Shown: positions 47,761 to 53,617, counted from the first letter of the stretch. The stretch is DNA of 64,000 nucleotides from Setoptus koraiensis (GCA_048013815.1 CM106586.1:23188001-23252000), one strand, 5' to 3'. The notes: a model not told the origin generated them from the sequence alone. Program-made: numbers and translations.

Positions 47761-50388
47761 CTATTTGTACTGATGGTGATGATTTAAAAGGTTGTGATGA
47801 TGATTCCTATTTGAGTTTCTTTGGCTTGTTTTCTTATTCTTCATACGGCGATTCTGGAACCTGATCACCATGGAACATTTGGAGTTTTGAATTTTTGTTA
47901 ATTCATTATATTATCGCAGCGCATTCATTAAAAGTTGATAGAAGGTAGTTTTGTATTAAGTAAGCAAACGTTCGATGTTCGTTTTCGATTATTTTAACAT
48001 AGCAATATCGCAAGCAAGACATTTGGTGGGCATCAAAAGGGAGAAAGAAAGAGTCAGAAATAGAGTCAAGTTGTTTAAAGAGAAAAGGTTAGAACTTGTA
48101 TAATAAGTTAAAATTAAGCGTAAGTGTATGATATGATGTGTCAAAAGCAACAGCGCGCAAAACATGACTGATATTGCATTGAGCACATTGACTCTGTCAA
48201 ACGCGGCGGCTGAAATTTTGTTAATATCGTGAGTGACAAATTGAATTATCATTAGCGCAAAAGTATATATATATATATAATACATATACTTTTGCTATAT
48301 TATATATATATAAATTACGTACCATATTTTCACTTGACGCTCGGTTAAACTCAAACTTCGTGCCAATTCCCATCTCTTTTGCTTATTAACATAATTACTA
48401 TATAAGAACTCTTTCTCTAATTCCAATGTTTGCGCCTTAGAATATGGTTTCCTTTTTTTCCTATGGTGATGTGCATGATTGTTGACAACATGTTGCTGTT
48501 GTTGTTGCTGCTGTTGATGTTGGTGCTGTTGGTGATGCTGCTGCTTGACAACAACATTGGGATTGACCGCTGCCGCTGCAGCCGCTCCGGCGGCAACAGC
48601 ATTTAGCAAATGTTGCTGTTTGACAACTATGGGTGCAACAACTGCAGCAGCAACAGCAGGATCTATAATTTGTTGTTCCTGGGGTTGTTGCGATTGAGAT
48701 TGTTGTTGCTGTTGTCGTTGTTGTTGTTGCTGCTGCTGTTGTTGTGATATCATAGATCTCGGGGTGACAGTGGCCACATGGTAAGCATCGGGTTCTGCTT
48801 TTAGAGCTACATTGGTGAGTGGTTGCTGGCGATGATGGAGGTGTGGATGTTGTTGTTGCTGGTGTTGATCTAAGTGTTGCTGGTGATGATGATGTGGGTG
48901 TTGCTGGTGTTGTTGTTGCAGTTGAGCCACAACCGATGAAGGGGATACACTAGCGGAAGTGGCCCCATTTGAGTGACCAGCAGCTAATTGTAACTGTTGC
49001 TGTTGTTGTTGATGGTGTTGTTGGTGCTGTTGGGCGAGCGGTTGTTGTTGTTGGTGGTGATGATGATGATAGTGCTGCTGTTGTTGATGATGCTGTTGGT
49101 GGTGATGGTCATGATGCAACTGTTGCTGATGTTGTTGTTGTTGTTGATTATGATGTGGATGATGCGGATGATGTGGATGATGTGGATGATGCGCGTGATG
49201 CGAATGATGTGGATGATGAGGATGATGTGGAAGATGTGGCGATGTGGCGGTGACTGCAGCTCCTGCTAGATATTGTGGTAATGTGCCATTGATCATCCAT
49301 GGATATGTCGACGCTTGATAACAGGCAGCCTGATGCAGGGCAGCCGCTTGTTGTGCAACACTAGAATGATGCTGCTGGGCCTCTTGATATTGTCTGGCAA
49401 CATTGACTGCATTTGCGACATTTAGCGAGCTAGGTGAATTGGCGACAGCGGCAGCCGCTGCTGCCGCACTCACCGCAGCCGATTGCTGATGGTGATGATG
49501 GTGGTGCTGATGATTATAGGCTGCTGCCGCGGCAACATTATGCTGGTGATGCGATTGTTGCATAGAGGCCGCATGATGCTGCTGTTGCTGTTGATGGTTG
49601 GCCCTATGGTGGTGCTGTTGTTGTTGCTGTTGTTGTAGGTGGTGATGTTGTTGTTGGTGGTGCTGTTGGTGGTGTTGAAGGTGCTGCTGGTGTGTCTGCA
49701 GGGGGCCCGATTGACCAGTTGCTGCAGACCCGTCCGACGATAGACTGTTGTTGTTGCTGTTGTGCAAATTGGTTTGTTGTTGCTGCTGCAATGTTGGCGA
49801 CACGTTGGTTGAGGATTTGTTGATGTGCTGTTGTTGTTGTTGAGTGAATTGTTCTTGATGCAAATCTAGCTGCTGGAGGTGATGCTGGTGGTGCAATTGA
49901 TTTGGTTGCTGGTGATGCTGCTGGTGCTGTTGTTGTAATTGCTGTTGGCCATTTGTGTTGCCGTCTTGCTGTTGTGATATGTGCTGGTGATGCTGAAAGT
50001 GTTGCTCATAATGCTGCTGATGCTGCTGGTGTTGTTGTTGTTGTTGTTGTTGGTGACTCTGAATTTGATTGAGATTATCTGGTGTAATATTATTTGTCAA
50101 TGTGGGCGTCGATTGGGGACTCACATGGCCGGCCAGCATGGGCTCGCCGGTGCCGCTCACTAAACTCGCGGGCGACTGATGATAATGACTGTGCGTGACA
50201 GGTACATTTGTGACCGGACTAGCCGAATGATTGAATTGATTGTGATTGTTGTAGTTGGTCCTAGATTGTGTGACGGCCGCCGATGCGGCTGCCGTTGCTG
50301 CTGCCACCGTCATTGCTGATTGTTCATTATGCGACACAACGGGATTGCTGTATGATAAATAATCTGTGGCGGCCTCAGTAATATTCAT
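47761..50388 (-). CDS. Abd-B: Hox protein Abdominal-B, 721 aa, 2 exons
   Basis: Exon 1 50388-48323, intron 48322-47861 (GTACGT..ATCAG), exon 2 47860-47761. Homeodomain [57 protein letters not shown] followed by TSQR is Abd-B diagnostic. N-terminus poly-Q/H/A. Confidence 0.95.
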
Positions 50389-51545
50389 CTTTTGCTCATC
50401 TTTTCATCAAGGATCGCGCCTATTAATTACCAGTAATTACTATTATCTAACTAACGCTCGCTGATCACTTGCTGACTGCACTGTCTTTGTTGTTTATGAT
50501 GATATTTTAATGTCTTAATTAATTAATTATTTATTTATTTACTTTTGATTGGCCCACTGTAATGGCTTTTCGCTCTTGCTCAGCGCTCTCTGATCGTTAC
50601 ACTCTAATGTCTTGCTGTTCTCTGCCTCGTCTCTCTCGCTGATCGCGTTGTCGTGTGTGAAAAATAAACAATTGTATTAGTTCGAACAATTCGACAATGC
50701 ACATTCGACAATATGTGACGTATAGGCCTGTATGCCTGCGACTAAGTCGGCCTAAGTTGCCTGCTCTCTCTCTCTCTCTCTCCTTCTCTCGCCTTGCGAA
50801 ATTTGTTCAGTCGACTCGAACGACGCTACAGCTTTCGCATGTTGCAATTTCACGTGTATCGCAAACAAATGTGTGTGTGTGTGTGTCTGCGCTTGCGCAA
50901 ACAACCCAGATGATTAGCTCATTTGGTTTGAGTTGCTCAAAATCGAATTGTCGAGTGTTGTCGAACTTTAGAATCGAACAAACTTTCAGCGAATCGTACA
51001 TCCTGCTCTCCAATCGCAAGACTCAGAGCGCAGACTCAGAGTGCACCCACTTGCGCCTTATACGGCGACTTTAGCCTCACTCAAGCTCACTCTGATGAGC
51101 AAAGTTCGAACCAACTCGACTCAATACCAACTATCACCACCTATAATCAACGTTATATACAGCCCAAGCGACCCCAACGCCATCTGGCCTCCGCGATGCT
51201 CACTAGACTTTTCGCTATCACCACAATGATACCGAAAAATGATAGATACTCGAGTTCTCTAGATGCAACATGGCTTAGCAATAATTCATTATTAAGTATA
51301 TAATTATAACTGACAATGGGCCAAACAATTAGATGTGATTATTACATAGTTACCACCACAGTTACAGCCTTTTTATTGTTGCGATTTTCAAGAAAATAGT
51401 CGCTTTCTCGTGATACACAATCATAGATATTTATATATTAAACTCACTCGAAACAGAGACTGAATGAGCTTCCAGAACATCTATTTTGGTTAGTCAACCG
51501 AAAATCAACCCTTCTAGCCGACAACAAATATGGTCCGCTCACTGT

Positions 51546-52256
51546 CTATCCTACGTTGGCTAGATAGTCTTTTATTTCTGCCGGTGTAAGACGCTTAAAT
51601 CCATCCTTATTGCAGACGCCAATCTCAATGTTGTCGGCTGTCATTTGGCCTTCAAAACCCTCTTTGAGTGTTAAAATAGCGGTGTGAACAGCGTCCTCTA
51701 ATTCCAGATCTTCTGAGTAACGTTTCTCAAGAAACGATTTGCCATTGACATAATTCTTTCCCATAGCTGTGGCTTTCCAGGCGAAGTAGGCTCCAGATGG
51801 ATCACATTGGAATAAGTAGGATCTATCTTCATCCTTGTCATAACCGGCCGTGAGAAGAGAGACTCCAAATGGTCTGACGCCTCCCGATTGTGTGTACTCT
51901 TGCATAATGTAAGCCACTTTCTGTACTAATTGTGGGGTAGGTATAGGTTCATCATATGTCAATTGATACTGTTGCGCTATCTTTCTGGCTTTTCTAACTA
52001 ATAGACGATAATCTGGTCCCATGCCCGAGTAAATCATTCCTATGTGTGATGTGATTGGCTCTATTTTCATAATAGAATGTTCATCAAATAACAATGACTT
52101 GTGTTTCTTCTCGGTTGCTAGAACAACTCCATTTGAGGCCTTGATGCCCACCGAGGGGGCACCGGCGGCTACAGCTGCCAGAGCATATTCTATTTGGACG
52201 AGTTTTCCCGACGGGCTGAATGTTGTCAACGAGAAACTGTATCTTTCTGTCGACAT
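51546..52256 (-). CDS. PSMA2: Proteasome subunit alpha type-2, intronless, 236 aa
   Basis: ATG 52256: [26 protein letters not shown]; [15 protein letters not shown]; [17 protein letters not shown]. Confidence 0.97.
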
Positions 52257-53617
52257 GTTGGTCTGGAAGATGTTTAGATGTTGACAAAAACACTGTTGGT
52301 GCGCTCTGGTGAATGTCGATGTGAAATCTGATGTTAAATTCAAATTGTCACGGTATTGAACTTTATTGGGCTGCGACGTTTAGCTGTTGACAAGATGCCG
52401 ATGTGCCAATAATAAGAGTAGAGGCCGAATAATAATCAGTTATTGTCAATGGATTCAGTGCATGTGTGTCGATAAGAATATTATCCGACATTTGCTTCAG
52501 CAGCTGTAAAACAGCGGTGCTCTCTTGGTCTCCCCCGCTCGACTGTGTGTGTCTCCCTTGAAGATAAGCGGGCATTTCACTGTTCAGTTGGTGGAAGGGA
52601 GCAAATAAACGATGGGAGCATACACACGACGGGAGACGGGGCACAAAATGCCAGTTTATTGTTGTCAAGGCGCTAGTTTTGAAACAACGCATATCCGGGT
52701 TCTTTCAGATGTGAATAGATGGCGCTAAGAAAAAAATATTTTTCACTATCTCAGTACAGTCATTGGTCTAACACCAGGCAAATAGTACACAAGTACTAGT
52801 GGCATTCCACATATTTAAAATACACACGGTATACCGACGATCCGAACAGACACACGGACGCACAGACAATGATGCGTACGTCTTGTTAAAGTGGTAATGT
52901 TTGTGCGTGTACTGTGGCATCCATAGTCTATTGGTGCTGTTGTTGCTCTATGTGCGATGATGCACACAAAACTCAATTGCCAATGTATAGGGTGATCATC
53001 TAATATAGATTGAGCGACGCTCAGAGTATAACGCAGAAACGCTACAGTTTGCAAAGTGTACACTATTTGTGCACACCAAAAATGAGCATAACTTAGTTTT
53101 GCTGCGTGTTGCCCATTCAATGGCCCATCCAACATGTAAGATACAACACCATTTGTACACAGCCTGTGCGCCGCCAAAGGTAACCTTTGTGCACTTTTGT
53201 GCGGCGCATCCAATCTCTTCTTGATCACCCTATACGTACACACGCATAGGCACACATACATGAAATGATACGTATAGAAATTATCACCACCAGCCACTAT
53301 TATTATTAATTATATATAAATAGATTATTCATACATTATTATCAACTTACAACAGATATGTATATACATATATCTGTATGTATCTATATGTATTTCACTA
53401 ATTATCTTCATTTACATACATAGACATATGTGTATGTAGGGACGCACATAAACAGACCATACATGAACAACACACATAGATTTAGTCAAGAAAGAGAGAC
53501 ACCACCACCACCACATATTTTCAGACAATATCAACAACATTAGAGAAACTTCTTGAAGATAAATCCTCTTGCGATATACACACATTTATATTGATACACA
53601 AGCATATATCCATATAT

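What the first reader, a model, noticed from the sequence alone, without database searches (positions are those of the whole stretch)
48441..49305. Abd-B lacking its conserved Trp but carrying a YPWM hexapeptide
Abd-B-class proteins normally have a lone Trp shortly before the homeodomain (fly EWTGQVSVRKKRKPY) and no YPWM. Here the equivalent stretch is [17 protein letters not shown], with no Trp. STYPWMING occurs at aa ~360-368 (YPWM = 49305-49294), an island of ordinary sequence within poly-Q/H/A. YPWM is the Exd/Pbx-binding motif of anterior/central Hox proteins. It lies ~276 aa from the homeodomain, far longer than usual linkers. Inference: a posterior Hox protein may have swapped its cofactor-binding motif. 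A simple deletion-fusion is unlikely because Abd-B normally lies 5' of abd-A/Ubx.
Basis: partly seen in the sequence, partly recalled or inferred. Interest (0 to 1): 0.72.

Follow-up and report, generated by a model that had tools for sequence, protein, structure and literature searches.

The report
Mite Abd-B carrying Ubx's front half
In this gall-mite-type genome the tail-end body-plan gene Abd-B has lost its own front half and instead carries a diverged copy of the front half of the mid-body gene Ubx, partner-binding YPWM motif included. A second mite species shows the same arrangement, so this is a natural domain swap between Hox proteins that has been kept by selection.

Summary
The minus-strand gene (CDS 50388..48323 + 47860..47761) has an Abd-B homeodomain. 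YPWM sits at aa 362-365 (49305-49294), 276 aa before the homeodomain, and it holds the only Trp upstream of the homeodomain.

The motif is not an isolated island. All of aa 1-377 is a paralogous copy of the N-terminal arm of two Ubx-like genes about 320 kb away. The copy runs to the residue before their homeodomains and keeps the 14-aa Ubx linker. The split is old and constrained: dS ~1.3, dN/dS ~0.13 overall and ~0.06 around YPWM.

The first ~190 aa are shared with Antp, Dfd, a pb/Hox3-like gene and Distal-less as well.

Fragariocoptes setiger Abd-B has the same build: an FPWM arm near-identical to its own Ubx arm, and no Trp near the homeodomain. Of 91 Abd-B-type proteins retrieved, 88 keep a Trp within 45 aa of the homeodomain, and only F. 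setiger has [YF]PWM.

Contigs from two independent data sets (three runs) bridge the junction, so this is not an assembly artefact.

No RNA data exist, and Exd binding is inferred, not shown. The scan had earlier noted a shared Antp/Ubx front end in this genome (s1-367031). The Abd-B case and its YPWM consequence are new here.

The parts
48323..50388 (-). Abd-B exon 1 (aa 1-689; the last codon, Trp48 of the homeodomain, is completed by the first base of exon 2)
   Evidence: ORF. GT donor at 48322-48321. No stops in frame, against 8-13 stops in the other forward frames.
49258..50388 (-). Ubx-type N-terminal arm (aa 1-377). It is homologous along its whole length to the arms of the two Ubx-like genes and ends at the residue where their homeodomains begin.
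   Evidence: 80% aa identity over 1-377 to C2:23563298-23564443. Alignment. DNA 69.5-69.9% over about 1200 bp. dN 0.16, dS 1.28.
49817..50388 (-). Head module (aa 1 to about 190, [11 protein letters not shown]...). It is shared by seven homeobox genes: Abd-B, two Ubx-like, Antp, Dfd, a pb/Hox3-like gene and Dll.
49294..49305 (-). YPWM hexapeptide core (aa 362-365), followed by the Ubx-type 14-aa linker [14 protein letters not shown]
48466..49257 (-). Q/H-rich linker specific to Abd-B (aa 378-641; 30% Q, 23% H). It has no Trp and no detectable relative.
   Evidence: No similarity to the F. setiger linker or to the canonical Abd-B N-terminus.
48323..48465 (-). Abd-B homeodomain, positions 1-48 (first two bases of the Trp48 codon)
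   Evidence: Pfam PF00046. 81% identity to F. setiger Abd-B, 77-87% to other Abd-B proteins.
47861..48322 (-). Intron of 462 nt, GT..AG, phase 2, inside the Trp48 codon. F. setiger Abd-B has the same position.
47761..47860 (-). Abd-B exon 2: the rest of the homeodomain ([10 protein letters not shown]...), a 22-aa tail and the TAG stop at 47763-47761
   Evidence: match to Oppiella Abd-B residues 367-393.
51332..51452 (-). Conserved non-coding island about 1 kb upstream of the ATG. It is shared with the upstream region of Ubx-like gene 2 (84% column identity) and is a possible shared promoter-proximal element.

Best explanation
The gene is the single Abd-B orthologue of an eriophyoid-type mite, and it is a natural chimera. 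Its ancestral N-terminal region, including the posterior-class EWTG/Trp motif, has been replaced. [quoted passage not shown] A 264-aa disordered Q/H-rich spacer and the Abd-B homeodomain follow.

The arm belongs to a family of interchangeable 'front ends' carried by at least seven homeobox genes of this genome. It was probably spread, and patchily re-homogenised, by ectopic recombination or gene conversion, with breakpoints in or next to CAA/CAG/CAC repeat tracts (inferred).

Shown: the homology, its boundaries, its age, purifying selection on it, and its presence in a second eriophyoid species.

Inferred: the protein is translated as one chain. Its only pre-homeodomain Trp (in YPWM) takes over the contact with the TALE pocket of Extradenticle, which the genome encodes, through a long flexible tether. 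Eriophyoid Abd-B would then engage Exd/Hth with central-class rather than posterior-class logic, and it would share whatever activation or partner functions the common arm provides.
For: - Arm homology: 80% aa identity over 377 aa to Ubx-like 2 and 67-69% to Ubx-like 1. The full alignment ends exactly at RRRGRQ of the Ubx homeodomain.
- Selection and age: dN/dS is 0.16/1.28 over the arm and 0.07/1.29 over aa 290-377. Synonymous changes occur inside and around YPWM. Both copies are therefore constrained and the split is old.
- Reading frame: it stays open through the spacer with 0 stops, against 8 and 4 stops in the other frames.
- Ubx origin: the YPWM context aligns with the Ubx-specific box and hexapeptide of non-eriophyoid mites and a spider (AV.R.Y ... 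A.C.Q.S ... YPWM.I.G).
- Second species: the F. setiger Abd-B arm matches its own Ubx arm up to FPWMH (572-nt alignment, 44 mismatches). It has no Trp near the homeodomain and the same Trp48 intron.
- Canonical motif elsewhere: 88 of 91 other Abd-B-type proteins keep the Trp, and none has [YF]PWM.
- No canonical Abd-B N-terminus: none is detectable anywhere in the genome, and there is only one Abd-B-class homeodomain.
- Exd: the PBC domain and an intact TALE homeodomain are encoded.
- Assembly: contigs of runs X1 and X2/X3 cross the arm/spacer junction with no differences.
- Precedent: an engineered Drosophila Abd-B with EWTG changed to YPWM is active, in fact hyperactive, in vivo (PMC11759358).
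Against: - No RNA run holds the locus, so transcript structure, start codon use and possible splicing inside the spacer are unverified.
- The YPWM-to-homeodomain distance of 276 aa is far outside the 3-50 aa reported for vertebrate HOX linkers (PMC9136108). Cooperative Exd binding in cis is therefore uncertain.
- In Drosophila the Abd-B Trp is dispensable for several Exd-dependent functions.
- The arms are not recognisably alike between the two species, apart from the VARQY box and the [YF]PWM core. A single origin followed by concerted evolution is therefore inferred, and two independent replacements are not excluded.
- Only two species could be compared.
Confidence: 0.75

Rival explanations
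1. The arm is real and translated, but YPWM is not used by Abd-B as an Exd contact. The shared arm would serve as a common Q/H-rich activation or condensate-forming domain. The hexapeptide would then be kept by another partner, or by repeated gene conversion from the Ubx-like genes (hitch-hiking).
For: - The 276-aa tether is far beyond known linkers.
- The head of the arm is also carried by Dll, which is not an Exd-dependent Hox protein.
- Nucleotide identity along the arm is mosaic (59-95% per 30 codons), as expected from patchy conversion.
- The Drosophila Abd-B Trp is dispensable in several contexts.
Against: - dN/dS of about 0.06 across the YPWM region, with dS about 1.3, argues for constraint in the Abd-B copy itself rather than recent overwriting.
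- The motif core survives in F. setiger Abd-B although the residues after it have diverged from Ubx.
Confidence: 0.3
2. The main Abd-B protein lacks the arm. Translation or transcription would start inside or after the spacer (for example at Met546), or an unseen intron would remove part of exon 1. The YPWM form would then be a minor isoform or none, much as Drosophila makes long and short Abd-B forms.
For: There is no RNA evidence either way. An in-frame Met lies at aa 546. Own knowledge: Drosophila Abd-B has m and r isoforms that differ at the N-terminus.
Against: - The arm has its own ATG, conserved in all seven genes, and is under strong purifying selection as coding sequence.
- It has stayed in frame with the homeodomain across 264 spacer codons, while the other frames carry stops.
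- The same single-exon layout occurs in F. setiger.
- The next gene upstream is only 1.1 kb away, so there is no room for other 5' exons.
Confidence: 0.1
3. It is an assembly or annotation artefact: a Ubx arm wrongly joined to the Abd-B homeobox, or a chance YPWM in low-complexity sequence.
For: The region is rich in CAA/CAG repeats that break short-read contigs. Both F. setiger contigs begin inside the arm.
Against: - The Abd-B arm differs from every other copy by about 25-30% at the DNA level, so it cannot be a collapsed or mis-joined copy.
- An 832-nt contig of X1 (48829-49660) and a 143-nt contig of X2/X3 (49172-49314) cross the junction with zero differences.
- F. setiger, assembled independently, shows the same architecture.
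- [FY]PWM occurs once in the six frames of 64 kb, and it lies in alignable homology to Ubx.
Confidence: 0.02

Closest known systems
Abdominal-B / Hox9-13 posterior-class Hox proteins (e.g. Drosophila Abd-B; Oppiella, Blomia and Centruroides Abd-B)
   Same: The homeodomain has the posterior signature ([10 protein letters not shown]-arm, [16 protein letters not shown]). It is 77-87% identical to arthropod Abd-B, and it is the only such homeodomain in the genome.
   Different: There is no EWTG-type Trp 7-35 aa before the homeodomain, and no canonical Abd-B N-terminal region. A central-class YPWM lies 276 aa upstream. The gene sits 3' of Scr and away from the cluster, next to a proteasome gene.
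Ultrabithorax / UbdA-class Hox proteins (the two Ubx-like genes of this genome; F. setiger, Tetranychus and Halotydeus Ubx)
   Same: The whole N-terminal arm matches, including the VARQY box, the A-A-C-Y-Q-S context, YPWM and the 14-aa linker INGTLP.YL.GA.V.
   Different: The homeodomain is of Abd-B type, not Ubx type. There is no UbdA peptide after the homeodomain, and 264 extra residues lie between the Ubx-type linker and the homeodomain.
Engineered Drosophila Abd-B with EWTG changed to YPWM (PMC11759358)
   Same: It is a posterior Hox homeodomain paired with a canonical hexapeptide core, and the engineered protein is functional, with increased activity in A7 suppression.
   Different: That is a laboratory four-residue substitution at the native short distance. 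Here nature replaced the entire arm, and the motif is 276 aa away.
Shared Antp/Ubx-like front end reported earlier by this scan in the same genome (s1-367031)
   Same: It is the same N-terminal head module ([11 protein letters not shown]...). I re-found it in Antp exon 1 and Ubx-like 1.
   Different: The Abd-B copy is much older (about 70-76% nt identity, dS above 1). It extends through the hexapeptide, and it crosses Hox classes from central to posterior, changing the type of cofactor motif.

Membership tests
Abd-B / posterior Hox class | Homeodomain with posterior-class signature residues and best reciprocal similarity to Abd-B | tested here: met
   Pfam homeodomain. All top arthropod hits are Abd-B at 77-87% identity. 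Oppiella Abd-B finds this locus as the only match at 79% identity, and it also finds exon 2.
Abd-B / posterior Hox class | Hexapeptide-like motif reduced to a lone Trp (EWTG type) a few residues before the homeodomain | tested here: not met
   The nearest upstream Trp is 279 residues before RKKRKPY. 88 of 91 comparison proteins have one within 45 aa.
Abd-B / posterior Hox class | Conserved Abd-B N-terminal region, alignable from scorpion to oribatid and astigmatid mites | tested here: not met
   The Oppiella Abd-B N-terminal 300 aa give no specific match anywhere in the genome. Pfam finds nothing but the homeodomain.
Abd-B / posterior Hox class | Position at the 5' end of the Hox cluster | tested here: not met
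   On the minus strand of C2 the 5'->3' order is Dfd, Ubx-like 2, Ubx-like 1, Antp, ftz-like, Scr, then Abd-B 244 kb further on.
Central-class (Ubx/UbdA) Hox N-terminal arm with canonical hexapeptide | YPWM core in a Ubx-type sequence context | tested here: met
   Alignments.
Central-class (Ubx/UbdA) Hox N-terminal arm with canonical hexapeptide | Short linker between hexapeptide and homeodomain (3-50 aa reported for vertebrate HOX proteins, PMC9136108) | tested here: not met
   276 aa here. The linker is 14 aa in the Ubx-like paralogues.
Central-class (Ubx/UbdA) Hox N-terminal arm with canonical hexapeptide | Hexapeptide binds the TALE pocket of Exd/Pbx | tested here: inconclusive
   Exd is encoded. 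The complex prediction gave no verdict, and there is no experiment.
Eriophyoid shared homeobox-gene front end (defined here and in s1-367031) | N-terminal head module [11 protein letters not shown]...[14 protein letters not shown] starting at the initiator Met | tested here: met
   Seven loci in the genome. Nucleotide identity of the first 30 codons is 84-95%.

The most novel reading that the evidence does not exclude
Eriophyoid mites would run most of their Hox genes, and Distal-less, with one interchangeable N-terminal front end that is exchanged and kept alike by gene conversion. In Abd-B this has replaced the posterior-class Exd interface with a functional central-class hexapeptide on a very long tether. 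Posterior identity in these two-leg-pair, worm-like mites would then be specified by an Abd-B homeodomain working with Ubx-type cofactor logic. That would be a natural, selected version of the domain-swap experiments done in flies, and possibly linked to their simplified body plan.
Probability: 0.35. Interest if true: 0.85.

Novelty: new variant of a known kind. Interest (0 to 1): 0.75.

Why it matters
Hox paralogue groups are defined by their homeodomains together with class-specific cofactor motifs. The split between a canonical YPWM in groups 1-8 and a lone Trp in groups 9-10 is one of the most conserved features of the family.

Here a posterior Hox gene has exchanged its whole N-terminal arm, motif included, for that of a central Hox gene. 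It has kept that arm under purifying selection in at least two eriophyoid species.

This offers a natural test of three questions:
- how much of Hox specificity lies outside the homeodomain;
- whether a hexapeptide can work over a 276-residue tether;
- how gene conversion between Hox paralogues can remodel the Hox code in a lineage with an extremely reduced body plan and genome.

The A. lycopersici genome paper compared homeodomains only and did not report this (PMC7738191). I found no paper describing it.

Tried and rejected
- **Word search with arm aa 1-125:** The search for homologous proteins gave no hit among proteins of 379-1205 aa. This says nothing about shorter or longer relatives.
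- **Exhaustive HMMER search with aa 285-385 (YPWM region):** it returned only two spurious bacterial repeat proteins. Not even the F. setiger arm was recovered, so the arm evolves too fast for cross-species sequence searches.
- **BLASTP of this exon 1 against F. setiger Abd-B:** only the homeodomain aligns.
- **Metagenome scan with an alignment of the two eriophyoid Abd-B homeodomain parts (A3):** it found one unrelated homeobox.
- **RNA runs:** none holds the locus. Read laying could therefore show only DNA-type contigs, and the 'joints' listed there lie in CAA/CAG repeats and are not evidence of splicing.
- **Complex prediction (Exd homeodomain, L045:1106-1348:-, with Abd-B aa 345-385):** no verdict, score 0.03. 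This is neither for nor against binding.
- **Scan look-ups by sequence and by words:** empty.
- **Readings rejected:** a chance motif, a misassembly, and a deletion-fusion of neighbouring genes. The last fails because both Ubx-like genes keep their arms and the arm exists in seven genes.
- **Joined model:** Exons were handled separately by reference.

Full report
**What is at the site**

The minus strand between 50388 and 47761 carries a two-exon gene.
- Exon 1 is one open frame from the ATG at 50388 to a GT donor after 48323.
- Exon 2 begins after an AG at 47861. It supplies [10 protein letters not shown]..., a short tail and a TAG stop at 47763-47761.
- The 462-nt intron interrupts the codon of homeodomain Trp48.
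- Pfam finds a homeodomain at aa 643-689 of exon 1.
- The closest proteins in the 5.8-billion-protein collection are all Abd-B, at 77-87% identity over the homeodomain part.
- Oppiella Abd-B, used as a probe on the whole genome, finds this locus as the only Abd-B-class homeodomain, and it also finds exon 2.

The gene is therefore the Abd-B orthologue. I handled the two exons separately by reference and never built or searched the joined protein.

**The observation**

- YPWM lies at aa 362-365 (49305-49294). It is the only [FY]PWM in all six frames of the window.
- Its Trp is the only Trp upstream of the homeodomain.
- The homeodomain begins at aa 642, so 276 residues separate the motif from it.
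- Abd-B from two acariform mites (Blomia, Oppiella), a parasitiform mite (Tropilaelaps), a scorpion and insects all show an (E/D)W motif 7-35 residues before RKKRKPY and no YPWM.
- Across the 91 retrieved proteins with an Abd-B-type N-arm, 88 have a Trp within 45 residues. The three exceptions are a fish multi-Hox gene model, a lamprey protein and the eriophyoid Fragariocoptes setiger. Only F. setiger has [YF]PWM.

**What it really is**

A homeodomain scan of the window's own genome (48.7 Mb, two contigs; the window is C2:23188001-23252000) located the other Hox genes. Two Ubx-like genes lie at C2:23.555 and 23.563 Mb. Both are single-exon, with identical UbdA-type homeodomains.

Both begin with the same sequence as this Abd-B. 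They stay alignable with it through "...AACYQ(S)[19 protein letters not shown]". After that they continue with RRRGRQTY, the start of their homeodomain, whereas Abd-B continues with a His/Pro/Gln-rich stretch. A protein search of the genome with Abd-B aa 1-377 gives 80% identity over the full 377 residues to Ubx-like 2.

YPWM is therefore not an island. It is the end of a 377-aa arm copied from, or shared with, the Ubx-like genes, and the arm includes their 14-residue hexapeptide-homeodomain linker.

The context of the motif also points to a Ubx origin. An AV.R.Y box, then A-A-C-Y-Q-S, then YPWM.I.G, aligns with the Ubx-specific SVTDAW...ACCQSS...FYPWMAIAG of Halotydeus, Leptotrombidium, Tetranychus and a spider.

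**The arm is part of a larger family**

The first ~190 residues, and the few bases before the ATG, recur at the start of several other genes:
- Antp exon 1, which ends with CYPWMRNQFG;
- Dfd exon 1, which ends with VYDWMQKK;
- a pb/Hox3-like gene on the other contig (VYKWMKVKR);
- Distal-less.

The points where the copies stop being alignable lie in or next to poly-Gln/His tracts. From this I infer recombination in CAA/CAG/CAC repeats as the spreading mechanism.

The earlier scan note s1-367031 reported the Antp/Ubx-like pair. I confirm it and extend the family to seven genes.

**Age and selection**

The Abd-B arm is about 70% identical in DNA to the Ubx-like arms over ~1200 bp.

| Comparison (Nei-Gojobori) | dN | dS |
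|---|---|---|
| Whole arm, Abd-B vs Ubx-like 2 | 0.16 | 1.28 |
| aa 290-377, around YPWM | 0.07 | 1.29 |

Codons in and around YPWM differ synonymously between the copies. If the Abd-B copy were drifting, the pairwise ratio would be near 0.5 or higher. So both copies are constrained as protein, and the split is old.

By contrast, the Antp, Dfd and pb-like arms are 96-97% identical in DNA (dS ~0.1), and the two Ubx-like YPWM regions are 96% identical. These reflect recent conversion or duplication. Identity between the Abd-B arm and the others is mosaic along its length, at 59-95% per 30 codons, as expected from patchy conversion.

The spacer keeps the reading frame with no stop in 266 codons. 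The other two frames have 8 and 4 stops.

**A second species**

The only eriophyoid proteins in the collection are from Fragariocoptes setiger.
- Its Abd-B (P0003; contig L040) has the same Trp48 intron.
- It has no Trp in the 134 residues before the homeodomain.
- It has an FPWM 135 residues upstream, preceded by AVARQYELASYQ.
- Its Ubx (P0231; contig L041) carries a near-identical arm up to FPWMH (572-nt alignment, 44 mismatches).

The same Ubx-arm-plus-Abd-B-homeodomain build therefore exists in a second eriophyoid.

Between the two species the arms are no longer recognisably similar, apart from the VARQY box and the motif core. Within each species the Abd-B and Ubx arms are alike. This pattern means either one ancient replacement followed by concerted evolution, or repeated replacement. 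I favour the first as more parsimonious but cannot exclude the second.

Non-eriophyoid acariform Ubx proteins start with the usual MMNSYF... and lack the eriophyoid head module.

**Not an artefact**

Three public runs from three studies hold the locus; two of them look like one data set filed twice. Contigs with zero differences cross the arm/spacer junction and the YPWM codons: X1 at 48829-49660, and X2/X3 at 49172-49314. The arm also differs from every paralogous copy by 25-30% of its bases, which a mis-join could not produce.

**How it probably works**

The genome encodes Extradenticle with PBC domains and an intact TALE homeodomain.

From established knowledge, the hexapeptide Trp inserts into the TALE pocket of Exd/Pbx. 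I take this from the Ubx-Exd and HoxB1-Pbx1 structures as cited in PMC11759358. On that basis the most likely role of the retained YPWM is to provide the Exd contact that the lost EWTG Trp provided in other Abd-B proteins, now on a long disordered tether.

This is inference, and several points weigh against it:
- Known linkers are 3-50 aa (PMC9136108).
- The fly Abd-B Trp is dispensable in several Exd-dependent contexts.
- On the other side, an engineered fly Abd-B with EWTG changed to YPWM is hyperactive rather than dead (PMC11759358).

The complex prediction of the Exd homeodomain with the YPWM fragment returned no verdict. No RNA data exist to confirm the transcript.

The inference of a motif swap is upheld, and it extends to the whole arm.

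The argument from cluster order does not hold in this genome. On the minus strand the 5'->3' order is Dfd, Ubx-like 2, Ubx-like 1, Antp, a ftz-like gene, Scr and then, 244 kb further on, Abd-B. A proteasome alpha-subunit gene lies 1.1 kb upstream of Abd-B. Abd-B is thus downstream of Ubx here.

A deletion-fusion is still excluded, because the donor genes keep their arms.

**Novelty**

The A. lycopersici genome paper compared only the 57-aa homeodomains of Hox genes and mentions neither hexapeptides nor shared arms. My literature searches found no description of an Abd-B with a canonical hexapeptide or of Hox paralogues sharing N-terminal arms in mites.

I rate it a new variant of a known kind: a bona fide Abd-B orthologue with a cross-class N-terminal replacement.

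Noticed in passing
L033/L013 (G000:C2:22150618-22153062, + strand): Distal-less, a non-Hox homeobox gene 1.1 Mb away, also starts with the [11 protein letters not shown] head module (78% aa identity to the Abd-B arm over 300 aa). It carries a second, internal partial copy of the module before its Dll-type homeodomain.
   Followed up: partly
L036 (Antp exon 1, C2:23.546 Mb), L037 (Dfd exon 1, C2:23.867 Mb), L039 (pb/Hox3-like, C1:17.10 Mb): These three genes share 96-97% nt-identical arms over about 360-400 codons (dS about 0.1), one of them on the other contig. This indicates recent gene conversion or duplication between Hox genes across chromosomes.
   Followed up: partly
G000:C2:23.236-23.867 Mb (the window holds the Abd-B end): The Hox order is non-canonical, with all genes on the minus strand: 5'-Dfd, Ubx-like 2, Ubx-like 1, Antp, ftz-like, Scr, (244 kb), Abd-B-3'. 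Abd-B and Dfd have changed ends relative to the central block but keep its orientation. Ubx is tandemly duplicated with identical homeodomains.
   Followed up: partly
window 51332-51452 (-) and L043:1490-1640: A non-coding island of about 110 bp, roughly 1 kb upstream of the Abd-B ATG, is 84% identical to a stretch 600-700 bp upstream of Ubx-like 2, although synonymous sites of the arms are saturated. It is probably a constrained shared promoter-proximal or 5'UTR element.
   Followed up: partly
window 50870-50920 (-) and L044:1480-1570: A 51-bp match (94%), partly a CA repeat, is shared between the Abd-B upstream region and the region upstream of Antp exon 1.
   Followed up: no
window 50299-50388 (-): The first 30 codons of the arm are 84-95% identical at the nucleotide level in all seven genes. 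This is far more than the rest of the arm and hints at a constraint beyond the protein, such as translation start context, RNA structure or very recent conversion.
   Followed up: no
window 47861-48322; L040 about 1146: The Abd-B homeobox intron sits inside the Trp48 codon in both eriophyoid species. An earlier scan note (s1-314241) reports the same position for labial in this genome.
   Followed up: partly
L040:1-40 and L041:1-40 (F. setiger contigs JAIFTH010000718.1 and JAIFTH010001634.1): Both F. setiger contigs begin at the same point inside the shared arm with identical first residues. The short-read assembly evidently broke on the repeated arm, so the N-terminal part of both gene models is missing from the public annotation.
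   Followed up: no
window 51546-52343 (-): A proteasome alpha-subunit gene (Pfam PF00227 and PF10584) ends 1.1 kb upstream of the Abd-B start codon. Abd-B is embedded among housekeeping genes rather than in a gene-free Hox domain.
   Followed up: no
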